In this document: piece after piece, positions 2,078-46,394 of the stretch
How positions within the stretch are numbered: the stretch's first letter is position 1
Layout: the number at the start of each line of letters is the position of its first letter
DNA from: Octopus sinensis
Lineage: Eukaryota
Length of the DNA: 64,000 nucleotides
NCBI RefSeq assembly: GCF_006345805.1
Contig: NC_043023.1
Coordinates: 558,001 to 622,000, forward strand
Direction: 5' to 3'
Program-made: the position numbers and the translations under genes
Notes under the pieces: model-generated
The model's input: only the letters and a program-made list of their open reading frames with translations
The model's database searches: none
Told to the model about the DNA's origin: nothing

Positions 2078-2640
2078 CAGGGTGGGTGAAAAGTAAGTAG
2101 GCATTAAATATTGGTTATAAAATCCAAATTCCTTTTCCAAATTTATTGAAACCAATGCTACATGTTCTTTATAATACGGAAAAATGGAAGTAAATCTTCA
2201 TATTTCAACATAAGCACCTCAAATGGCCCCAGGGATGGAATGAACGACCTTCTGAAGGACATCGTCTGGGATATCATTGAAAACCTCCTGAATCCGTGTC
2301 TCCAAGTCCTCAAGTGTGCGAGGTTCTGTCCTGTACACCTCCTCTTTTGTGTAACCCCACAGGTAAAAATCACATGGAGTGAGATCTGGACTTCTGAGGT
2401 CACAGTCTTCACAGTCTGACCCGTAATGGAATTTCCATGGACAAAGATTCAATTTTTCATGCAACACCATATGTATTGTATGTCTTGTTAGTCCTCTTCC
2501 ACGAGCTGCTTGACATGTTGAATTTTGCAGGATGTCATTAAACATTTCCTGCACTGTTGCCACGCTCTCCGCTGATCAGGATGTGGTTGAACGGCCACTT
2601 CTTGCATCGGTCATCAGCATTGCATGGCATCTGGCCGTAG
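2078..2640 (-). mobile_element. Internally deleted Tc1/mariner transposon remnant
   Basis: TA-CAGGGTG terminus at 2076-2084; minus translation has SGRSTTS, HTIHMVLHEKLNLCPWKFH and the C-terminal RSPDLTPCDFYLWGYTKEEVY motif; catalytic core deleted, stop codons present. Confidence 0.88.
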
Positions 2641-3819: not shown

Positions 3820-4123
3820 CATGCGTGTGTGTGTATGTGTGTGTGTATTCGAGGCGTAACCTTGTTGAATGCATACCGTACAATGCATGCCTATGTGTGT
3901 GAGTGTGTGTACGAGTGTGTGTATGTGTGTGTCTGTGCATATGCCAAATTATATTTTGGTACAAATGTTTCATATCTATGAGAGACAGATGAAAAGAAGT
4001 TACATACAATAAGCATGCATCTTACAGGGGAGATGTTGCTTTGATTTTTTAAAATAGAAGACTCTCGCTTAAATACGAGACGACGCCTCAACTAGATTAA
4101 TTGTGCGTATGTATATATATATA

Positions 4124-4168
<45 letters not shown>

Positions 4169-4411
4169 ATATATGTATATATGTGTGTGAGCGTATATAA
4201 TATATATATTTATGTATGTATATATATGTATATATATACATATATATATATATTGTATTATATAATATGTAGGTATTTATTAACACACATATTTATATTA
4301 ACATGTTTGATATATGTACTGTATACATACATACATATATATATATATTATATATATATATATATATACATATACATGTATATGTGTATGTATATATATA
4401 TATATATACGT

Positions 4412-4454
<43 letters not shown>

Positions 4455-4554
4455 GTATACATGTATTATATATGTGTATATAATATAACATATACATATG
4501 TACGTATATATATGTATACATATATATATGTGTACACACATACACATATGTATG

Positions 4555-4626
<72 letters not shown>

Positions 4627-6064: not shown

Positions 6065-6387
6065 TGATTTGAGGGAGATTACGGGGACGTAAACATATCA
6101 ATACCGGTTTTCAAGCACAACGACACATACACATACCTTTACATGTGTGTGTGTGTGTATGTATGTATGCATGTACGTATATGTTTGTGTGTCTGTGTTT
6201 GTCCCCCACCATCACTTGACAACCGATGTTGGTGTGTTTACATCCCTGTAAACTAGCGGTTCGGCAAAAGAGTCCGATTGAATAAGTACTAGGCTTACAA
6301 AGTTACGGGGACGTAAACACACCGACATCGGTTATCAAGGGATGGTAGGGGCCAAACACAGACATATACATACATATATATTCACTC

Positions 6388-6433
<46 letters not shown>

Positions 6434-6530
6434 TCACTCACACACATGTATATGGCTGTATATGTTTCTTTGTGCTTGATAGCCGGCGTTGATGGGTTTA
6501 TGTCCCCGTAAACTCCCTCAAATCACACCC
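6065..6530. mobile_element. SINE-A fragments in both orientations, bounded by two inverted SINE-A/module-X chimeric pieces
   Basis: 6065-6130 and 6460-6530 are reverse complements that share the junction GAGGGAG(A/T)TTACGGGGAC. Confidence 0.7.
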
Positions 6531-7518: not shown

Positions 7519-7990
7519 GTGTCCCCCAAAATCGGACATCATTTGAGATGTCCATACCGGAGTGACGACATGGTCAAAAGAAATTAAACTTAATAGTCTT
7601 AATTTTGAACGTAAGTTGTGTTCTACAGATTTCCAGCGAAAATTTCTCTGAGACGATAATTTTATAATGTTCCAAAGTTATCCCTTTTGATGAGCCCCTT
7701 TCGTGTTCAGTTGTGTCATGTGGATTTTCTTCGCCCCAAATGCGAACATTTTGCTTCTTTGCCATTCGTATGGAATGTGGCCTCGTCGCTGAAAAGAAGT
7801 CGGTTTTCAAAGTCGTCATTTTCAAGTTCTCTTGCATATCTTCAAAGAACGTTTTATGCTTTTGCTCCTCAGCCGGGTTTAAAGTCCGCAGAAGCTGAAG
7901 CTTGTAGGGGATCAGCCACAAGTGTTTTCTTATGATACACCAAACAGTTGACTTGGGGATCTGGGTTTCCATGGGTTGCTCTTCCCGGCA
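7515..7990 (-). mobile_element. Tc1/mariner transposon, 3' part
   Basis: ETQIPKSTVWCIIRKHLWLIPYKLQLL; frameshifted LENDDFENRLLFSDEATFHTNGK; QNVRIWGEENPH; terminus GGTGTCCCCCAAAA near 7517. Confidence 0.88.
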
Positions 7991-8042
7991 TAAACACATC
8001 AACGCCGGGTATCAAGCACAAAGACACATACAGACATATACA

Positions 8043-8105
<63 letters not shown>

Positions 8106-8225
8106 TCACAATCAAGGAACGGCCATAATAGGCCATTCACCCACTATAAATAACAGCCAAAGCTTCAACCGCAAAATAACATCAATTCCGCAAACCAGGA
8201 GAAAATTAAAAAACATTTACCTGTA

Positions 8226-8332
8226 ATTTCTTATACGATGCACCGTTTCATCTACTGTTTAATGGTAAACTAACCTGATTAAATTAAATCAAGCCAATCT
8301 TCCATAGGCCCTTAGATTCGTCAGTAAGAAAT
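8226..8332 (-). ncRNA. Type I hammerhead ribozyme, array unit 1
   Basis: ATTTCTTA-CTGACGA-ATCTA...TAGAT-GAAA-CGG TGCA TCG-TA/TAAGAAAT on minus. Confidence 0.88.
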
Positions 8333-8719
8333 AGCCAGATTGGAACAGATATTTTCACGAGGCATTTCTGTCCCTGCCTCGGCAATATCTGACCTAAAAT
8401 TTTCAAATCATCGCACTCGCGCCAAATTTATCGGCAGCAAATAAATATAAGCCGCCGATTCCATTACGGAATCAACCAGAAAATTCATAATTAATTAATA
8501 TAGGGTGGCAAAAAAAAAAAAATTTTGTAGAATTTTTTTGCCACCAGCGGCCTAGTGGGAAAAAATTAAATAGTCATAGACCATTTATAAGTTCAACATC
8601 ACAATCAAAGAACGGCCATAATAGGCCATTCACCCACTAGAAATAACAGCCAAAGCTTCAACCGCAAAATAACATTAATTCCGCAAACCAGGAGAAAATT
8701 AAAAAACATTTACCCTGTA

Positions 8720-8824
8720 ATTTCTTATACGATGCACCGTTTCATCTACTTTTAATGGTAACTAACCTGATTAAATTAAATCAAGCCAATCTTCCATAGG
8801 CCCTTAGATTCGTCAGTAAGAAAT
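8720..8824 (-). ncRNA. Type I hammerhead ribozyme, array unit 2
   Basis: Same core and stems; small deletions only in the stem II insert. Confidence 0.87.
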
Positions 8825-9207
8825 AGCCAGATTGGAACAGATATTTTCACGAGGCATTTCTGTCCCTGCCTCGGCAATATCTGACCTAAAATTTTCAAAT
8901 CATCGCACTCGCGCCAAATTTATCGGCAGCAAATAAATATAAGCCGCCGATTCCATTACGGAATCAACCAGAAAATTCATAATTAATCAATATAGGGTGC
9001 CAAAAAAAAATTTGGTAGAATTTTTTTGCCACCAGCGGCCTAGTGGGAAAAAATTAAATAGTCATAGACCATTTATAAGTTCAACATCACAATCAAGGAA
9101 CGGCCATAATAGGCCATTCACCCACTAGAAATAACAACCAAAGCTTCAACTGCAAAATAACATTAATTCCGCAAACCAGGAGAAAATTAAAAAACATTTA
9201 CCCTGTA

Positions 9208-9314
9208 ATTTCTTATACGATGCACCGTTTCATCTACTGTTTAATGGTAAACTAACCTGATTAAATTAAATCAAGCCAATCTTCCATAGGCCCTTAGATT
9301 CGTCAGTAAGAAAT
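9208..9314 (-). ncRNA. Type I hammerhead ribozyme, array unit 3
   Basis: Same core and stems intact. Confidence 0.88.
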
Positions 9315-9930
9315 AGCCAGATTGGAACAGATATTTTCACGAGGCATTTCTGTCCCTGCCTCGGCAATCTGACCTAAAATTTTCAAATCATCGCACTCGC
9401 GCCAAATTTATCGGCAGCAAATAATATAAGCCGCCGATTCCATTACGGAATCAACCAGAAAATTCATAATTAATCAATATAGGGTGGCCAAAAAAAAATT
9501 TTGTAGAATTTTTTTGCCACCAGCGGCCTAGTGGGAAAAAATTAAATAGTCATAGACCATTATAAGTTCAACATCACAATCAAGGAACGGCCATAATAGC
9601 CATTCACCACTAGAAATAACAACAGCCAAAGCTTCAACCACCGCAAATAACATTATTCCGCAACCAGGAGAAAATTAAAAAACATTTACCCTGTAATTTC
9701 TTATACGATGCACCGTTTCATCTACTGTTTAATGGTAAACTAACCATCTTTTTGCCACCCTATATTGATTAATTATGAATTTTCTGGTTGATTCCGTAAT
9801 GGAATCGGCGGCTTATATTTATTTGCTGCCGATAAATTTGGCGCGAGTGCGATGATTTGAAAATTTTAGGTCAGATATTGCCGAGGCAGGGACAGAAATG
9901 CCCCGTGAAAATATCTGTTCCAATCTGGCT

Positions 9931-10034
9931 ATTTCTTACTGACGAATCTAAGGGCCTATGGAAGATTGGCTTGATTTAATTTAATCAGGTTGTTTACCAT
10001 TAAACGTAGATGAAACGGTGCATCGTATAAAATT
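9931..10034 (+). ncRNA. Type I hammerhead ribozyme, inverted arm unit 1
   Basis: CTGACGA 9939-9945, GAAA 10012-10015, GTA 10025-10027; one-base deletion in the 3' strand of stem I. Confidence 0.8.
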
Positions 10035-10416
10035 ACAGGGTAAATGTTTTTTTAATTTTCTCCTGGTTTGCGGAATTAATGTTTTTTGCGGTTGAAGCTT
10101 TGACTGTTATTTCTAGTGGGTGAATGGCCTATTATGGCCGTTCCTTGATTGTTATGTTGAACTTATAAATGGTCTATGACATTTAATTTTTTCCCACTAG
10201 GACGCTGTGGCAAAAAAATTCTACAAAATTTTTTTTTTTTGCCACCCTATATTAATTAATTATGAATTTTCTGGTTGATTCCGTAATGGAATCGGCGGCT
10301 TTATTTATTTGCTGCCGATAAATTTGGCGCGAGTGCGATGATTTGAAAATTTTAGGTCAGATATTGCCGAGGCAGGGACAGAAATGTCCCGTGAAAATAT
10401 CTGTTCCAATCTGGCT

Positions 10417-10523
10417 ATTTCTTACTGACGAATCTAAGGGCCTATGGAAGATTGGCTTGATTTAATTTAATCAGGTTAGTTTACCATTAAACAGTAGATG
10501 AAACGGTGCATCGTATAAGAAAT
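10417..10523 (+). ncRNA. Type I hammerhead ribozyme, inverted arm unit 2
   Basis: Stem I ATTTCTTA 10417-10424 / TAAGAAAT 10516-10523; CTGACGA 10425-10431; stem II ATCTA/TAGAT; GAAA 10500-10503; predicted cleavage after 10515. Confidence 0.9.
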
Positions 10524-10752
10524 TACAGGGTAAATGTTTTTTTAATTTTCTCCTGGTTTGCGGAATTAATGTTATTTTGCGGTTGAAGCTTTGACTGTTA
10601 TTTCTAGTGGGTGAATGGCCTATTATGGCCGTTCCTTGATTGTGATGTTGAACTTATAAATGGTCTATGACTATTTAATTTTTTCCCACTAGGCCGCTGG
10701 TGGCAAAAAAATTCTACAAAATTTTTTTTTTTTTGCCACCCTATATTGATTA

Positions 10753-10784
<32 letters not shown>

Positions 10785-10929
10785 GTATGTATATGTTTAT
10801 GTGTCTGTATTTGTCCCCTATCATCGCTTGACAACCAATGTTGGTGTGTTTACGTTCCCGTAAGTTTGTAAGCCTAGTACTTATTCAATCGGACTCTTTT
10901 ACCGAACCACTAGATAACACGGATGTAAA

Positions 10930-11300
10930 CACACCACCATCTCTTCTGAAACTGCTGGTCGTCCAGATCCTTTTTTCCAACACAAACAGCTTTCTTCTTA
11001 AAACTTCTCATGCTAAATTCAAATCTGCCTCCCTGTTGGCGCTTGTTTATGAAATCTTCTTACAAATACACGTTGCATATACACGTTTGACTGAGTTTGG
11101 GCGTACTTCAGTGCACAAAACGCCTTTTCTGTTGCAGTAAACGGCATGTCTAATATTCAAAAGAAAATCATACGAAAGGTCATGTTTTAAAAATGTATTG
11201 AATTCTAGACATACTACTAAAATTTGAGACAATTTGGACGAAAATTGTTCACGTTATTATGTGATGAAACGATGTCAAATGTTTTGGGACACCTTGTATA
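10930..11300 (-). mobile_element. Tc1/mariner transposon, 5' TIR and N-terminus (likely same copy as 7515-7990)
   Basis: Terminus TACAAGGTGTCCCAAAA on minus; MPFTATEKAFCALKYAQTQSN...GSGRPAVSEEMV with stops. Confidence 0.85.
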
Positions 11301-30967: not shown

Positions 30968-32356
30968 CACATCTTTGATCATAGGTCCATGGGATCAGGA
31001 CTGACCTGGGGCTAAACAACAAAAACAAAAACCATAACCACTAATTACAATACTATACATTAGATAATGTAGTCCTAGATACACTATGCCTGAATAAAAG
31101 ATGGGATGGTCACAGCTGGAGCAGCTTTAATCATAGATCTGCTGACCTGGGGCTGAACAACAATAACAACTACAACCACCAATACTAATCATTATACTAC
31201 ACATTGAATAGTATAGTCCTAGATACACTATGGCTGAATGATAGATGGGATAGTCATAGCTGGGACATCTTTGATCATAGGTCTGCTGGATCAGCACTGA
31301 CCTGGGGTTAAACAATAACAACAGCTGTAGCCACTAACGCTAACCACTACACATTAGATAATGTAATCCTAGATACATCATGTCTGAATGATAGATGGGA
31401 TGGTCACATCTGGAACATTTTTGATCATTGGTCTGTTGGATCATGATTGACCAGGGGTTAAGCAATGACCACAAATATCACTAATGCTAACTGATACATT
31501 ATACATGAGATTAAGTAGTCCTAGATACACTATGCCTGAATAAAAGACGGGATGGTCACAGCTGGAGCAACTTTGATCATAGTTCTGTGTGGACAGGACT
31601 CACCTGGGGCCACACAGCAACAATTATAACCACTAATACTAACTACTTATATTGTACACTAAATAATGTAGTCCTAGATACACTATGCCTGAATAAAGAT
31701 GAGATGGTCACAACTGGAATATCATAGCTCTGTGTGGACAGGACTGACCTGGGGCTAAACATCTGCAACTATAGCCACTGATACGAACTATTATACTTTA
31801 CATTAGGTAATGTAGTCCTACATACACTAAGCCTGAATAAAAGATGGGATGGTCACAGGTGGAGCAACTTTGATCATAGGTCTGTATGGACAGGACTGAC
31901 CTGGGGCTAAACAGCAACAATTATAGCCAATTATACTAACTACTTATATTGTACACTAAATAATGTAGTCCTAGATGCACTATACCTGAATAAAAGACGG
32001 AATGGTCACAGCTGGAATATCATTATATGTTAGATCAGGACTGACCTAGGGCTAAACATCTGCAACTATAGCCTCTGATATTAACTACTATATTATACAT
32101 TAGATAATGTAGTCCTAGATACACTATGTCAGAATAAAAGAAGGGATGGCCACAGCTGGACCATCGTTGATCATAGTTCTACTGGATCAGGACTGACCTG
32201 GGGCTAAATAACAATAGCCTTAAATATTAACTACTATACATTAGATAATGTAGTCCTAGATACACTATGTCAGAATAAAAGATGGGGTGGTCATGGTTGG
32301 AACATCTTTGATCGTTTGGTCTGCTGGATTAAGACTAACCAGGGGCTAAACAACAG
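30968..32356 (+). repeat. Tandem array of ~141-153 bp units (9 anchors)
   Basis: GTCCTAGATACAC-type anchors at 31072, 31216, 31366, 31518, 31671, 31815, 31968, 32112, 32253. Confidence 0.92.
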
Positions 32357-33647: not shown

Positions 33648-34995
33648 AACACCAACGAAGGAAATCTCTACATGGTAGCCAGATCTGCTAGAAACAGCAG
33701 CCAAATCAACCTCAAATCCAACCTACAAACGTATGTATATATGTATGCATGTATGAGCCAATGAAGGAGACCTCTACATGGTAGCTAGACCTGGTAGAAA
33801 TAGCAGCAAAATCACCCTCAAATCCCACCTACATACGTATGTATATATGTATGCATGTATGAGCCAATGAAGGAGACCTCTACATGGTAGCTAGACCTGG
33901 TAGAAATAGCAGCAAAATCACCCTCAAATCCACCTACATATGTATGTATATTGTATGCATGTATGAGCCAATGAAGGAGACCTCTACATGGTAGCTAGAC
34001 CTGGTAGAAATAGCAGCAAAATCACCCTCAAATCCCACCTACATATGTATGTATATATGTATGCATGTATGAGCCAATGAAGGAGACCTCTACATGGTAG
34101 CTAGACCTGGTAGAAATAGCAGCAAAATCACCCTCAAATCCCACCTACATACGTATGTATATATGTATGCATGTATGAGCCAATGAAGGAGACCTCTACA
34201 TGGTAGCTAGACCTGGTAGAAATAGCAGCAAAATCACCCTCAAATCCCACCTACATACGTATGTATATATGTATGCATGTATGAGCCAATGAAGGAGACC
34301 TCTATATGGTAGCTAGACCTGGTAGAAATAGCAGCAAAATCACCCTCAAATCCCACCTACATACGTATGTATATATGTATGCATGTATGAGCCAATGAAG
34401 GAGACCTCTATATGGTAGCTAGACCCGGTAGAAATAGCAGCAAAATCACCCTCAAATCCCACCTACATACTATGTATATATGTATGCATGTATCAGCCAA
34501 TGAAGGAGACCTCTACATGGTAGCTAGACCTGGTAGAAATAGCAGCAAAATCAACCTCAAATCCCACCTACGTAGGTATGTATATATATGTATGCATGTA
34601 TGAGCCAATGAAGGAGACCTCTACATGGTAGCTAGACCTGGTAGAAATAGCAGCAAAATCAACCTCAAATCCCACCTACGTACGTATGTATATATGTATG
34701 CATGTATGAGCCAATGAAGGAGACCTCTACATGGTAGCTAGACCTGGTAGAAATAGCAGCAAAATCAACCTCAAATCCCACCTACGTACGTATGTATATA
34801 TGTATGCATGTATGAGCCAATGAAGGAGACCTCTACATGGTAGCTAGACCTGGTAGAAATAGCAGCAAAATCACCCACAAATCCCACCTACATACGTATG
34901 TATATATGTATGCATGTATGAGCCAATGAAGGAGACCTCTACATGGTAGCTAGACCTGGTAGAAATAGCAGCCAAATCTCCCTCAAATCCCACCT
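33648..34995 (+). repeat. 106 bp tandem array (12 homogeneous units plus a diverged first unit)
   Basis: ATGAGCCAATGAAGGAGACC at 33753, 33859, 33963, 34069, 34175, 34281, 34387, 34492, 34600, 34706, 34812, 34918. Confidence 0.95.
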
Positions 34996-35009
34996 ATTGT
35001 CTTATGTAT

Positions 35010-35207: not shown

Positions 35208-35263
<56 letters not shown>

Positions 35264-35855
35264 CTCTTTACTCTTTTACTCTTTTACTTGTTTCAGTCAT
35301 TTGACTGTGGCCATGCTGGAGCACTACCTTTAGTCGAGCAAATTGACCCCCAGGACTTATTCTTTGTAAGCCTAGTACTTATTCTATGGGTTCTTTTTGC
35401 CGAACCGCTAAGTGACGGGGACGTAAACACACCAGCATCAGTTGTCAAGCAATGCTAGGGGGACAAACACAGACAAACAAACACACACACACACACACAT
35501 ATATATATACATATATACGACAGGCTTCTTTCAGTTTCCGTCTACCAAATCCACTCACAAGGCTTTAAAAATGTGGCTTGGTGCTTAGGTTATTCGACTC
35601 ACGAATCATGAGTTCGATTCTCGAAAGTCCGTGCTCCAGTCTGCTTCGCCAGCAAAAATATGGAGTGCCTGTACTTCAAAGGGGCCAGCCTTGTCCCACT
35701 CTGTGTCACACTGAATTTCCCCGTGAACTACGTTAAGGGACCATGTGTCTGTGGGGTTGATCGGATCAACTGGACCTGTGTGACAAATGAGCCAACGAAG
35801 AAGACCTCTACATGGTTGCTAGACTAGCTAGAAACAACAGCTAAATCTCCCTTAT
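35010..35855. mobile_element. SINE cluster: SINE-A head (+), truncated SINE-A (-), degraded SINE-C (+) running into module X
   Basis: Family matches. Confidence 0.75.
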
Positions 35856-39949: not shown

Positions 39950-40880
39950 CACACCTATATACACGCACGGCGCAATTCGTTTAGTTTCCGTCAACCGATC
40001 CTCTCACCCCACTTTTGGCCTGCTTAGGGCTACAGTAGAATACATTTGCCCAAGGTGCCACGTTGTGGGGCTGAACTCGAAACCATGGGGTTGGGAAGCA
40101 AACTTCTTACCACACAGCCATGCCATATATAATCACAACGTGACACCTTGAGCAAGTAGCTTCTACCATAGTCTCAAGCTGACCAAGTCTTGTGAGTGGA
40201 TTTGGTAGATGGAAACTGAAAGAAGCCTGTTGTGTGTGTGTGTGCATTTGTCTTTGTGTCTGTCCTCTACCACAGCTACACAACCAGTGGTGGTATGTTG
40301 ATGGCCCCGTAACCTTGCGGTTCGGCTGAAGGGTTCGATGGAATAAATACAGGCTTTAAAAGAAAGTACTGAGGTTGATTCATTCGACTGAAATCTCCTC
40401 AGTGATGCCCCAGCATGGCCGCAGTCTAATGACAAAGATAGAAGATATATATATATATAGGTGAAGGAGTGGGTGTGTGGTAAGTAGCTAGCTTACCAGC
40501 AACATGGTTCCAGCTTCAGTTCCACTGCATGGTACCTTGGGCAAGTGTCTTTTACTATAGCCTTGGGTCGACCAAAGACTTGTGAATGGATTTGGTAGAT
40601 GGAAACTGAAAGAAACCCGTCGTATATATGTATGTATATATATATGTGTGTGTGTGTGTGTGTATGTTTGTGTGTCTGTGTTTATCCCCCCAATTTCGCT
40701 TGATAACCGATGCTGGTGTGTTTATGTCCACGTAACTTAGCGGTTCGACAAAAGGGACCGATAGAATAAGTACTAGGCTTCCAAAGAATAAGTCCTGGGG
40801 ATGATTTCCTTGACTAAAGGTGGTGCTCCAGCATGGCCACAATCAAATGAGTGAAACAAGTAAAAGAGTAAAAGAGAGTA
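39410..40880. mobile_element. Cluster of four SINE-A copies (two minus, two plus)
   Basis: Family matches. Confidence 0.85.
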
Positions 40881-41914: not shown

Positions 41915-43050
41915 TGTTTCTTTATTAGCCACACAGGGCTGCACACAGACAGGACAAATTACAAGGTAGAGCTGTTCTTTTGGGGGTAAAAAAAGGGGGG
42001 TCTCGTTTTCGATCAAAAGGGATCGTAAAAGGAAAGAAAGAGGACAAAAAAGGGGGGGGGGATAAAATTTTTTTTTTTTAATTTTAAAAGGCGGGGAGGA
42101 AAAAAGGGAAAGGAAAAAAATTGATCGTTATCACAGAAATGTCAATATGAAGTGTAAAGGAGAGGACAGGTGAGGTTTACCCGTGGAAAGAAAAGCCTAC
42201 GGAAAAGACCACGGTAACCTCGGTCAATGAACATGTTATATTTCTTTTTTTTTTTTGGCAAATAAGCAACTCTCTGTATTAATTTTTACGGTTCATAGAA
42301 TCATAGTCAAGGTGGCTTCGTCATTCATACGTGCCATCCTTGCTACATTCACCCATCTTTTTTTAAAACATTCACTAGACAAAACTTGCCTCTCTACTCT
42401 CACTTTCCTCTTCAAGTGATACTTGAAGAAGTTGATGAGAGATTGACCAGAGAGGAAAGTGTTTGTCTCCAATCCTTTCAGACGCGTCCACCAGATACAT
42501 TCTTTCGCCATAGCCACAAGTATGATAAAAATAGTTCTTCCTTTCCGTTTGAAGGAAGGAGGCGTGACGATATTAACGATAGACTCGGCTGATAAACCGA
42601 CACGTCCCACACGTGACAGCAGTCGTTCGACATAAGCCCACAGGTCGGAGATTGTTGGACACTGCACGATTGCGTGCAGAGCGGTTTCGTCGCTCTGCCC
42701 GCATCTCGGGCAGGTCGGCCCCGTGTTTCTCGAGCCATGCCTATAGAGCTTATCCCGAACGGGTAGCGCTTCTCGGTAGCACCGCCAGGCCAGGGATCTC
42801 TGGAAGTTGTCCATAGGTCCCGGCCCGAAAGTCGTTTCAAACAGGCGGGTCAGGTATTCCTCGTCGACGCCCAGGTTTGCTCCAAGATCGTCGTCGTACC
42901 TCCCCTCCACTAATCCCCTATAGAATGCTTTGGTTGTGTTGAAGTCACTCTAGGCCAATAAAATTTTCTTGTTCCTGACGGTTGTTCTTTATACCTACAA
43001 CGGACTGCTCGAAGCTTACAAACTTTCTACACTCAGATCCTTAGATCTTA
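41915..43050 (-). mobile_element. Tx1/L1-clade LINE 3' end (zf-RVT region of ORF2 plus 3' UTR), 5'-truncated
   Basis: ORF 42293..42910: LAWRCYREALPVRDKL...CPRCGQSDETALHAIVQCP (C-x2-C...H-x4-C); 3' UTR ends AATAAAGAAAC. Confidence 0.88.
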
Positions 43051-46237: not shown

Positions 46238-46394
46238 AAAAGTGGCTAGCAAGCCTCAGCAAAGAATCGAACCCGGCACCACTCCATTTTCAGCTGAGTG
46301 CTCAGTACCATTAAGCTAAGAGACTCTCCCCGCATCTGAATTTTCACAAGATAACTAAAAATTCATAAGGGATCCATTATCTGAATTAAAGGTG

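What the first reader, a model, noticed from the sequence alone, without database searches (positions are those of the whole stretch)
8104..10754. Tandem ~488 bp repeat with a complete hammerhead ribozyme in every full unit: candidate retrozyme / circular RNA element
Seen: each full unit contains ATTTCTTA-CTGACGA-ATCTA-(58 nt)-TAGAT-GAAA-CGG-TGCA-TCG-TA/TAAGAAAT, i.e. an 8 bp stem I, CUGANGA and GAAA core, a 5 bp stem II, a short stem III with palindromic UGCA loop and a GUA cleavage triplet. There are five complete copies plus a half copy. Predicted cut sites are 488-494 nt apart, so a read-through transcript would release unit-length monomers. Established: non-LTR retrozymes of metazoans are non-coding tandem monomers with one type I hammerhead that accumulate as circRNAs, usually somewhat shorter than this. 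Inference: this is an octopus retrozyme-like element, non-coding and probably mobilised by Penelope-like RT. I cannot tell whether it is already catalogued.
Basis: partly seen in the sequence, partly recalled or inferred. Interest (0 to 1): 0.92.

Follow-up and report, generated by a model that had tools for sequence, protein, structure and literature searches.

The report
Octopod hammerhead retrozyme array, inverted arms
A 2.65-kb block of 488-bp non-coding repeats, each carrying a self-cleaving hammerhead ribozyme motif, sits inside a (TA)n microsatellite of an octopod genome; it looks like an ordinary animal 'retrozyme' (small circular-RNA retroelement) whose two head-to-head arms carry the insertion signature of Penelope-like retrotransposons.

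Summary
The repeat and the hammerhead motifs are real and at the stated coordinates. The block is not a one-direction tandem, though. It has two head-to-head arms: 8104-9745 (3.4 units, ribozyme on the minus strand) and 9749-10754 (2.1 units, plus strand), joined by a 3-nt filler. Five motifs have a complete catalytic core. Four are intact, and one (9931-10035) has lost 2 nt of helix I. A sixth is a 3' half cut by the junction. Such a motif never appeared in 1000 simulated 64-kb windows, yet no Rfam hammerhead model detects it, even at E<=10 on 131 nt. Likely reasons are A10.1-U11.1 instead of G-C and a 56-58-nt helix II extension. The monomer (488-494 nt between cut sites, 36% GC, no ORF over 61 codons, circle fold z=-5.5) meets every sequence-level criterion of metazoan non-LTR retrozymes. 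A paralogous repeat copy (6225-6502) is an empty site, so the array is an insertion into a (TA)n core. Both arms point their sense 3' ends outward, the twin-priming / Penelope-like architecture. Cleavage, circles and dispersal could not be tested. Verdict: new member of a known kind, moderate interest.

The parts
8053..8103 (.). Left half of the target microsatellite, (TA)25
   Evidence: TRF, 100% matches. It abuts the first unit base at 8104.
8104..9745 (-). Left arm: 3.36 units of the 488-bp repeat. Sense (ribozyme) strand is the minus strand, with the sense 3' end at 8104 next to (TA)n and a 5'-truncated end at 9745.
   Evidence: TRF period 488, 3.4 copies, 96%; unit alignment; motif positions.
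8226..8332 (-). Hammerhead m1, intact. Helix I 8 bp, CUGACGA, helix II 5 bp + 58-nt extension, GAAA, helix III 4 bp with UGCA loop, GUA. Cuts after 8234.
   Evidence: Descriptor hit; element coordinates.
8720..8824 (-). Hammerhead m2, intact (56-nt helix II extension). Cuts after 8728.
9208..9314 (-). Hammerhead m3, intact. Cuts after 9216.
9704..9745 (-). 3' half of a hammerhead (part of the helix II extension, GAAA, helix III, GUA). It lacks the CUGANGA box because the arm is truncated at the inversion junction, so it is presumed inactive.
9746..9748 (.). 3-nt filler (ATC) at the head-to-head junction. No microsatellite is left between the arms.
   Evidence: (junction context)
9749..10754 (+). 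Right arm: 2.06 units in sense on the plus strand. The 5'-truncated end lies inside the T-tract at 9749, and the sense 3' end at 10754 adjoins (AT)n. This end lies 112 nt further along the unit than the left arm's end.
   Evidence: Inverted repeats I1-I8, 97-99% complementary to the left arm; alignment.
9931..10035 (+). Hammerhead p1: core complete, but helix I is reduced to 3 bp by a 2-nt deletion (TAAAATTA), so it is probably crippled. Nominal cut after 10027.
   Evidence: (fails the descriptor)
10417..10523 (+). Hammerhead p2, intact. Cuts after 10515.
10755..10794 (.). Right half of the target microsatellite, (AT)~21
   Evidence: TRF 10753-10794
7989..8052 (.). Left part of the host repeat copy that was interrupted by the insertion
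   Evidence: 90-91% identical to 6502-6439; colinear alignment.
10795..10941 (.). Right part of the interrupted host repeat copy. The family is about 340 bp with an internal microsatellite and has at least 20 copies in the window.
   Evidence: 89% identical to 6364-6225
6225..6502 (-). Paralogous 'empty site': the same repeat with left part, microsatellite and right part contiguous and no array.
   Evidence: Local alignment of the joined flanks against rc(6200-6530), colinear across the junction.

Best explanation
This is a genomic copy of a metazoan non-LTR retrozyme in an octopod. It is a non-coding, AT-rich 488-nt unit carrying one type I hammerhead ribozyme.

Inferred life cycle: a multimeric sense transcript folds its hammerheads. 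This probably happens as double hammerheads between neighbouring units, because helix III is weak as a hairpin but forms a 12-bp duplex between two copies. The transcript cuts after GUA every 488-494 nt. The 5'-OH / 2',3'-cyclic-phosphate monomers are then ligated by a host ligase into highly base-paired circles. Those circles, or uncleaved multimers, are reverse-transcribed by a Penelope-like RT/GIY-YIG endonuclease at a nicked (TA)n microsatellite.

This locus looks like one such event. Both strands of the staggered break primed cDNA synthesis (twin priming). That gave two multimeric arms whose sense 3' ends abut the microsatellite and whose 5'-truncated ends meet head-to-head.

Shown here: the motif, the repeat anatomy, the lack of coding capacity, the fold, the insertion relative to a paralog, and the arm topology.
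Inferred: cleavage, circularisation, the RNA intermediate, and the identity of the mobilising enzyme.

At this locus the minus-strand transcript of the left arm could release two monomers (9215-8728 and 8727-8234). The right arm could release one only if the damaged p1 still cuts.
For: Complete hammerhead core and type I topology in 5 units, 4 of them with all helices intact. There were 0 chance occurrences in 1000 simulated windows.

The active fold is only 2.1 kcal/mol above the MFE. The helix III region forms a 12-bp self-duplex (-19.5 kcal/mol against -1.2 for the hairpin) with a palindromic UGCA loop. This is the trait of metazoan type I hammerheads that act as dimers (PMC4209133; PMC6155905).

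Monomer properties: 488-494 nt, GC 36%, longest stop-free stretch 61 codons. Circular fold -138.6 kcal/mol, z=-5.5 against dinucleotide shuffles, 64% paired, with helices I and II retained. These match the published definition: tandem monomers, GC<45%, no LTR/PBS/PPT, self-paired circRNAs (PMC7229834). Length range 51-972 bp, and most families have at most 7 units.

Insertion: the joined flanks align colinearly at about 90% with a paralogous repeat copy that has an uninterrupted microsatellite.

Architecture: the arms are 97-99% complementary. Both sense 3' ends face outward at different unit positions, the 5' ends meet with a 3-nt filler and no residual (TA)n, and GC skew flips. Partial tandems plus an adjacent inverted 5'-truncated copy, and a (TA)n insertion bias, are described PLE features. 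Octopus spp. carry PLEs (PMC8557442; PMC13282606).
Against: No Rfam hammerhead covariance model reports the motif, even at E<=10 in a 131-nt search.

The pair closing helix II is A10.1-U11.1, whereas G10.1-C11.1 is 'highly conserved' in canonical hammerheads (PMC4209133). Helix I (8 uninterrupted bp) and helix II (5 bp plus a 56-58-nt extension) show no recognisable loop-loop tertiary contact. Activity may therefore be low or dimer-dependent.

The copies are 97-99% identical, so core conservation and covariation are uninformative.

Only one locus is seen. There is no other unit fragment in the 64 kb, and no relatives in any reachable collection. Dispersal and mobility are therefore unshown.

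No PLE ORF was seen in the window (one search was limited).

Three variants fixed between the arms and a few shared across arms do not fit a single homogeneous circular template without extra assumptions.
Confidence: 0.74

Rival explanations
1. It is ordinary satellite or tandem DNA that carries a decayed or never-functional hammerhead-like motif. It is amplified and moved by DNA-level processes (unequal crossing-over, replication slippage, extrachromosomal circular DNA reinsertion), with no self-cleaving RNA or circular RNA intermediate.
For: Rfam models do not recognise the motif. The A10.1-U11.1 pair is non-canonical. There is only one locus in the window. Arm-specific fixed variants could reflect within-arm homogenisation by unequal exchange.
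Against: A full core with three correctly placed helices is not expected by chance (0 of 1000 simulated windows). Historically, hammerhead-bearing 'satellites' (newt satellite 2, pDo500 of cave crickets at about 500 bp) proved to self-cleave (PMC2837043; PMC6155905). A single internal head-to-head junction with both sense 3' ends at the target is what twin-primed reverse transcription gives. An inversion inside a pre-existing array would leave two junctions.
Confidence: 0.14
2. The units are pseudo-LTRs of an autonomous octopus Penelope-like element, that is, a solo or partial-tandem pLTR remnant whose RT/endonuclease body was never copied or was lost. They are not an independent non-autonomous family.
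For: PLE pLTRs carry hammerheads and form tandem/inverted structures at microsatellites (PMC8557442; PMC4209133). In Xenopus, retrozyme families are sister to PLE pLTRs.
Against: The insertion bounded by the empty-site flanks contains only unit sequence with no ORF over 61 codons. Animal PLE hammerheads are usually minimal, with helix III absent or 1-2 bp, whereas this one has a 4-bp helix III and an 8-bp helix I. Since pLTR-derived arrays are what the 2026 preprint calls non-LTR retrozymes, this is more a question of origin than a distinct mechanism.
Confidence: 0.08
3. The inverted arrangement is an assembly artefact (a chimeric or foldback long read, or mis-joined repeat copies), and the real locus is a simple one-direction array.
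For: The unit next to the junction (9216-9703) has a cluster of small deletions that could be poor polishing. The assembly is scaffolded, with a 100-N gap at 18540-18639.
Against: The junction is not a mirror. The left arm stops in the helix II extension and the right arm starts in the T-tract, with a 3-nt filler, unlike a foldback chimera. The arms carry their own fixed variants. The two outer flanks are in the correct mutual orientation relative to the paralog.
Confidence: 0.04

Closest known systems
Metazoan non-LTR retrozymes (Cervera & de la Pena 2020, NAR, PMC7229834; e.g. Mytilus galloprovincialis, Acropora millepora, Ambystoma mexicanum)
   Same: Head-to-tail tandem monomers, one type I hammerhead per monomer in one polarity, GC<45%, non-coding, no LTR/PBS/PPT, monomer predicted to be highly self-paired. 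The mussel hammerheads also lack the archetypal loop1-loop2 contacts.
   Different: The monomer is longer than the 170-400 nt circles first described, though inside the 51-972 bp range of the 2026 survey. The hammerhead has A10.1-U11.1, an uninterrupted 8-bp helix I and a 56-58-nt helix II extension, and it escapes the Rfam models. No cephalopod example was found in the searchable literature. Expression and circles are untested here.
pDo500 satellite of Dolichopoda cave crickets (about 500-bp repeat with a hammerhead; PMC2837043)
   Same: Nearly the same unit length. One hammerhead per unit, processed in a double-hammerhead form. Helix III contains a G-U pair. Changes at 10.1/11.1 are tolerated through compensation.
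   Different: Insect rather than mollusc, with no sequence relationship tested. pDo500 is a high-copy satellite, whereas only one short array is seen here.
Newt/salamander satellite 2 hammerheads (about 330-bp repeats)
   Same: [quoted passage not shown]
   Different: The newt helix III is 1-2 bp with conserved loop1-loop2 contacts and G10.1-C11.1. Here helix III is 4 bp (including A15.1-U16.1 and a G-U) and no canonical tertiary motif is evident.
Penelope-like elements and their pLTR hammerheads (Cervera & de la Pena 2014, PMC4209133; Craig et al. 2021, PMC8557442)
   Same: Insertion architecture: partial tandems, an adjacent inverted 5'-truncated copy and a (TA)n microsatellite target. Type I hammerhead with a palindromic helix III/loop 3.
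   Different: There is no RT/GIY-YIG ORF in the insertion. Animal PLE hammerheads are 'minimal' (no or tiny helix III, helix I 4-5 bp, an extra base between positions 9 and 10.1, G10.1-C11.1). No 30-40-bp 'tail' is present at either end.
L1 twin-priming inversions
   Same: One internal head-to-head junction, both sense 3' ends at the target flanks, and both segments 5'-truncated.
   Different: The template here is multimeric or circular and the presumed enzyme is a PLE, not L1. There is no poly(A), and any target-site duplication is hidden in the microsatellite.

Membership tests
Hammerhead ribozyme, type I | Conserved core C3U4G5A6N7G8A9 ... G12A13A14 ... A15.1-U16.1, H17 at the cleavage site | tested here: met
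   CUGACGA, GAA, A15.1/U16.1 and GUA are identical in all five copies.
Hammerhead ribozyme, type I | Three helices around the core, with helix I open and helices II and III closed | tested here: met
   Helix I 8 bp, helix II 5 bp plus extension, helix III 4 bp with a UGCA loop in 4 copies. The constrained fold is 2.1 kcal/mol above the MFE. p1 has only 3 bp of helix I.
Hammerhead ribozyme, type I | G10.1-C11.1 pair closing helix II (highly conserved in canonical hammerheads) | tested here: not met
   A10.1-U11.1 in every copy. Conservation statement from PMC4209133. Compensated changes at these positions occur in pDo500.
Hammerhead ribozyme, type I | Loop 1 / loop 2 tertiary contacts with typical helix sizes (I about 6 bp, II about 4 bp) | tested here: inconclusive
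   There is no internal loop in the 8-bp helix I. An A-rich internal loop follows the 5-bp helix II. Mussel retrozyme hammerheads also lack the archetypal contacts.
Hammerhead ribozyme, type I | Recognised by the Rfam hammerhead covariance models | tested here: not met
   No hit at gathering score, at E<=10 on 3.1 kb or at E<=10 on 131 nt.
Hammerhead ribozyme, type I | Helices supported by compensatory changes among copies | tested here: inconclusive
   The copies are 97-99% identical and there are no substitutions in helices I-III. No relatives could be retrieved.
Hammerhead ribozyme, type I | Mg2+-dependent self-cleavage after H17 | not testable with these tools
   Requires in vitro transcription.
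Metazoan non-LTR retrozyme | Head-to-tail tandem monomers of tens to hundreds of bp | tested here: met
   488-bp period, 3.4 + 2.1 units. Published range 51-972 bp, with most families at no more than 7 units.
Metazoan non-LTR retrozyme | One type I hammerhead per monomer, in one polarity only | tested here: met
   The descriptor finds one motif per unit, always on the same unit strand. No other ribozyme family appears on either strand.
Metazoan non-LTR retrozyme | Low GC (<45%), non-coding, no LTR/PBS/PPT | tested here: met
   GC 36%, longest stop-free stretch 61 codons, no tRNA-like part. The insertion consists of units only.
Metazoan non-LTR retrozyme | Monomer RNA highly self-paired | tested here: met
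   Circular MFE -138.6 kcal/mol, z=-5.5, 64% paired.
Metazoan non-LTR retrozyme | Accumulates as monomeric circular RNA | not testable with these tools
   No transcriptome is reachable. Peptide and exact-ORF routes into public assemblies found nothing.
Metazoan non-LTR retrozyme | Mobile: several dispersed genomic loci | tested here: inconclusive
   No other copy in the 64-kb window. The array is an insertion relative to a paralogous repeat copy. The host genome is not in any searchable DNA collection.
Metazoan non-LTR retrozyme | Co-occurs with Penelope-like elements in the same genome | not tested
   Literature only: Octopus spp. have Naiad PLEs and O. vulgaris has 30 'Penelope' families. 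No PLE ORF was recognised in the window (limited scan).
Autonomous Penelope-like element | ORF encoding RT plus GIY-YIG endonuclease between pLTRs | tested here: not met
   The insertion delimited by the empty-site flanks holds only 488-bp units with no ORF over 61 codons.
Autonomous Penelope-like element | Insertion architecture: partial tandem, inverted 5'-truncated copy, microsatellite target | tested here: met
   compared with the description in PMC8557442.
Viroid-like / deltavirus-like circular RNA replicon | RNA-only replicon with ribozymes in both polarities (or a delta-antigen ORF) | tested here: not met
   It is encoded in chromosomal DNA between host repeat flanks, has a ribozyme in one polarity only and has no ORF.

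The most novel reading that the evidence does not exclude
The locus is the footprint of a single retrotransposition event. A microsatellite-targeting Penelope-like RT/GIY-YIG enzyme copied retrozyme RNA, either circles by rolling-circle reverse transcription or uncleaved multimers, from both sides of a staggered (TA)n break. If the same head-to-head, 3'-ends-out, microsatellite-embedded architecture recurs at other loci, it would supply the structural 'motif' that de la Pena et al. 2020 said was missing for assigning animal retrozymes to their autonomous partner. The ribozyme would then define a hammerhead subclass (A10.1-U11.1, long helix II arm) that current covariance models miss, which would imply that cephalopod, and perhaps other, retrozymes are under-counted.
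Probability: 0.3. Interest if true: 0.6.

Novelty: new member of a known kind. Interest (0 to 1): 0.45.

Why it matters
Animal retrozymes are a recently recognised source of abundant small circular RNAs. Their link to Penelope-like elements rests so far on co-occurrence and pLTR similarity. This locus adds three things:
(i) a cephalopod example, which I could not find in the searchable literature;
(ii) a hammerhead variant invisible to Rfam-based annotation, a warning that surveys based on covariance models or canonical descriptors under-count such elements;
(iii) a clean insertion with an empty-site paralog, whose twin-arm, microsatellite-embedded anatomy is what PLE-type integration predicts.

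A side consequence is that the two 1-kb inverted arms would form long double-stranded RNA if the locus is read through. That is relevant in animals with very active RNA editing and small-RNA pathways, but it is speculation and was not tested.

It remains one short array with untested activity, so the finding is useful but not surprising to specialists.

Tried and rejected
1. Rfam 15 cmscan at gathering score on the whole window, at E<=10 on 7900-11000 and at E<=10 on 10405-10535. There was no hammerhead or other ribozyme hit. The only matches were microsatellite-driven miRNA-like noise in the (TA)n flanks.

2. Reaching other copies through protein databases. A query of all 14 stop-free peptide stretches of the unit gave no hit among 3702 candidates. 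Exact look-ups of four unit ORFs gave nothing on record.

3. Exact 20-mer (GATGAAACGGTGCATCGTAT) scans. There were 5 metagenome hits, 0 viral hits and 4 bacterial-genome hits. All are chance matches in bacterial-type contigs, with no CUGANGA upstream and no further similarity. Octopod host DNA does exist in some metagenome assemblies, so a differently chosen pattern might have worked.

4. Pfam scan of 10 non-repetitive ORFs. Only a LINE-type zf-RVT at 42296-42949 was found, with no RT/GIY-YIG near the array.

5. A first descriptor search with exact dinucleotide shuffling timed out, and a rerun crashed on the window's N run. I replaced the shuffles with 1000 first-order Markov simulations.

6. 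Rejected: the unit as a tRNA-derived SINE (no tRNA); a protein-coding gene; a foldback-read artefact (asymmetric junction); and two independent insertions (no microsatellite left between the arms).

7. Unit variants could not decide between a rolling-circle template and a linear multimer. There are 3 sites fixed between the arms but also polymorphisms shared across arms.
Full report
OBSERVATION

The window contains a 2651-bp block (8104-10754) built from a 488-bp unit. Tandem Repeats Finder reports 8104-9745 as 3.4 copies of period 488 with 96% matches. It does not extend this array to 10754. The reason is that from 9749 onward the sequence is the reverse complement of the same unit. The repeat finder gives inverted pairs of 180-282 nt at 97-99% complementarity between 8208-9368 and 9749-10754, and the GC skew changes sign at about 9700.

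Exact searches for the two conserved halves of the ribozyme place CTGACGAATCTA at 8313, 8805 and 9295 on the minus strand and at 9939 and 10425 on the plus strand. TAGATGAAACGGTGCATCGTA lies at 8234, 8728, 9216 and 9704 (minus) and at 10007 and 10495 (plus).

The predicted cut sites (after 8234, 8728, 9216 and 9704, and after 10027 and 10515) are 494/488/488 and 488 nt apart. Three details differ from the description:
- The block is two head-to-head arms, not one tandem.
- One of the five motifs (9931-10035) has lost two bases of the helix I 3' strand and keeps only 3 bp of helix I.
- The insert in helix II is 58 nt in three copies and 56 nt in two.

IS THE MOTIF MORE THAN CHANCE, AND IS IT A HAMMERHEAD?

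I wrote a type I descriptor: helix I at least 5 bp, CUGANGA, helix II at least 4 bp with up to 100 nt between the boxes, GAAA, helix III at least 3 bp including A15.1-U16.1, then UH. It finds exactly the four intact copies in the window and nothing else. It found nothing in 1000 simulated 64-kb sequences with the window's dinucleotide transition frequencies, both strands.

The anatomy of the intact copies is:
- helix I of 8 bp (AUUUCUUA/UAAGAAAU)
- C3-A9 = CUGACGA
- helix II of 5 bp (AUCUA/UAGAU), continued after an internal loop by a long imperfect hairpin
- G12A13A14
- helix III = A15.1-U16.1, C-G, G-C and G-U, capped by the palindromic loop UGCA
- cleavage triplet GUA

ViennaRNA keeps helices I and II in the minimum-energy fold of the 117-nt region. 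The fully canonical fold is only 2.1 kcal/mol higher (-28.1 against -30.2). Helix III is weak as a hairpin (-1.2 kcal/mol). Two copies can instead form a 12-bp intermolecular helix III (-19.5 kcal/mol). This is the double-hammerhead arrangement described for newt and other metazoan type I ribozymes (PMC4209133; PMC6155905).

No Rfam 15 hammerhead model reports the motif at gathering score, at E<=10 on 3.1 kb, or at E<=10 on 131 nt around the best copy. Two features probably explain it: the 56-58-nt extension of helix II, and an A10.1-U11.1 pair where canonical hammerheads have a 'highly conserved' G10.1-C11.1 (PMC4209133). Helix I also lacks the internal loop that contacts loop 2 in the classical animal ribozymes.

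I therefore treat it as a structurally complete but atypical hammerhead. Its activity is plausible, most likely in dimeric form, but unproven. Because the copies are 97-99% identical (apart from the deletion-rich unit L1), neither the invariance of the core nor the lack of covariation is informative.

THE UNIT

Measured from cut site to cut site, the monomers are 488-494 nt with 36% GC. The longest stop-free stretch in any frame of a multimer is 61 codons antisense and 47 codons sense. The unit has no tRNA-like part, and no other Rfam family matches on either strand.

Folded as a circle, the sense monomer reaches -138.6 kcal/mol, against -110.3 +/- 5.2 for dinucleotide shuffles (z=-5.5). It is 64% paired and retains helices I and II.

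The sense strand contains a run of 9-13 T. By general knowledge such a run would terminate RNA polymerase III, so sense transcripts are more likely to be Pol II products. This is inference.

THE LOCUS

The block is flanked by (TA)25 on the left (8053-8103) and (AT)~21 on the right (10753-10794). The sequences just outside these tracts belong to one copy of a very abundant repeat of about 340 bp with an internal microsatellite, present at least 20 times in the window.

Its closest relative, at 6225-6502 on the other strand, aligns colinearly at about 90% with the left flank, a microsatellite and the right flank, and it has no array. This paralogous empty site shows two things. The array is an insertion into the (TA)n core, and the insertion consists of unit sequence only. 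It is therefore not embedded in a larger coding element. Any target-site duplication is hidden by the microsatellite.

In sense orientation both arms have their 3' ends at the outer boundaries. The left arm ends ...CCTTGATTGTGATG|(AT)n. The right arm ends ...CCCTATATTGATTAAT|(AT)n, 112 nt further along the unit. Their 5'-truncated ends meet in the centre. The left arm starts inside the helix II extension, the right arm starts inside the T-tract, and 3 nt (ATC) lie between them with no residual microsatellite.

One internal head-to-head junction with both sense 3' ends on target DNA is what results when both 3'-OH ends of a staggered break prime reverse transcription. This is twin priming, known from L1 (my own knowledge). 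It is also the structure Craig et al. 2021 describe for Penelope-like elements: partial tandems with an adjacent inverted 5'-truncated copy, and a strong bias for microsatellites, (TA)n for Naiads (PMC8557442).

Alternative origins fit less well. An inversion inside a pre-existing array would leave two junctions. Two independent insertions would leave microsatellite between the arms. A foldback assembly artefact would be mirror-symmetric, and this junction is not.

WHAT THE VARIANTS SAY

Of the variable alignment columns, 46 are private to one unit, 3 are fixed between the arms (T6/T7, GGCTG/GACTG, CCTCG/CCCCG) and 9 are shared in other patterns, including a G/A site polymorphic in both arms.

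A single homogeneous circle copied by rolling-circle reverse transcription would give identical arms. The pattern therefore needs one of three things: two template molecules, a heterogeneous linear multimer, or later within-arm homogenisation. I could not decide between these.

The unit next to the junction (9216-9703) carries a cluster of 1-2-nt deletions. These may be real decay or poor consensus polishing.

WHAT THE LOCUS COULD PRODUCE

A minus-strand transcript of the left arm contains three intact ribozymes and could release two monomers (9215-8728 and 8727-8234). The half motif at 9704-9745 lacks the CUGANGA box. A plus-strand transcript of the right arm contains one intact and one damaged ribozyme.

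Sense transcription of the two arms is divergent from the centre. A transcript crossing the whole locus would instead pair one arm with the other as a roughly 1-kb double-stranded hairpin. This is speculative.

HOST AND LITERATURE

The only good coding remnant in the window is a LINE-type zf-RVT ORF at 42296-42949. Its only named relative is from Argonauta hians (55% identity). Closer unnamed relatives sit on metagenome contigs that evidently contain octopod DNA. An octopod origin is therefore supported, but the species is not determined.

The defining description of animal non-LTR retrozymes (PMC7229834; PMC7761336) and the 2026 preprint that derives them from PLE pLTRs (10.64898/2026.07.22.740005) fit the unit on every sequence-level criterion. 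None of these papers mentions a cephalopod hammerhead or retrozyme. Neither does the 2026 Octopus vulgaris repeat annotation (PMC13282606), nor a full-text search for 'hammerhead ribozyme' plus 'octopus'. I could not check Repbase or Dfam.

LIMITS

No animal genome or transcriptome could be searched by DNA. Routes through peptide fragments, exact ORFs and a 20-mer found nothing relevant. Copy number, dispersal, covariation, expression, circularity and cleavage therefore remain open.

VERDICT

This is a real, well-delimited insertion of a hammerhead-bearing 488-bp non-coding repeat. It is best explained as an octopod non-LTR retrozyme integrated by a Penelope-like, twin-primed mechanism into a (TA)n microsatellite (confidence about 0.74). 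It is a new member of a known kind, with an atypical ribozyme variant and an informative insertion architecture. Interest is moderate (0.45).

Noticed in passing
window 11954-12300, 6143-6502, 54347-54658, 40558-40878, 35261-35566 and about 15 more: A very abundant repeat of about 340 bp with an internal microsatellite (CA/TA type), at least 20 copies in 64 kb at 70-89% identity. Parts of it are inverted copies of each other (foldback-like). It is the host of the retrozyme insertion.
   Followed up: partly
window 33652-34996: Tandem array of a 106-bp unit, 12.7 copies, 96% matches, with a higher-order period of 425. The hammerhead descriptor and the Rfam gathering scan found no ribozyme in it.
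   Followed up: no
window 30973-32353: Tandem array with a 152-bp period (also 297 bp), about 8-9 copies, 74-76% matches, flanked by long trinucleotide (ACC/CAC) tracts.
   Followed up: no
window 19078-19443, 19870-20239, 21090-21457: Three separate dimers of a 184-186-bp unit (91-92% matches). The first consensus appears to be in the opposite orientation to the other two. Their translations recur all over the window, so they are SINE-like.
   Followed up: no
window 22063-23592 and 4108-4623: Very long microsatellites: (TCA) x about 504 (1.5 kb) and (TA) x about 261. The window as a whole is extremely microsatellite-rich, with 162+ TRF rows.
   Followed up: no
window 42296-42949 (-): 218-codon open frame with a Pfam zf-RVT domain (E=1.8e-08), the C-terminal part of a LINE-type reverse transcriptase. 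The best named relative is from Argonauta hians. 80% and 68% relatives lie on ENA and JGI metagenome contigs, which shows octopod host DNA in those metagenomes.
   Followed up: partly
window 14062-14549 (+), 7577-8011 (-), 2222-2575 (-): Open frames that by eye look like mariner/Tc1-type transposase remnants (e.g. ...HHDNIWPH...YSPNIAPSDYHLF...). Pfam gave no hit at E<=0.01. The one at 7577-8011 lies directly left of the array.
   Followed up: partly
window 46251-46325 (-): ARAGORN calls a tRNA-Phe (GAA), but the Rfam gathering scan of the window reported no tRNA there. It may be a degenerate tRNA or a SINE head.
   Followed up: no
window 18540-18639: A run of 100 N (scaffold gap), so the source is a gapped assembly.
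   Followed up: no
window 9216-9703: The unit next to the inversion junction carries many more 1-2-nt deletions than its neighbours (about 10 indel columns against 1-6). This is either local decay or imperfect consensus polishing near the inverted repeat.
   Followed up: partly
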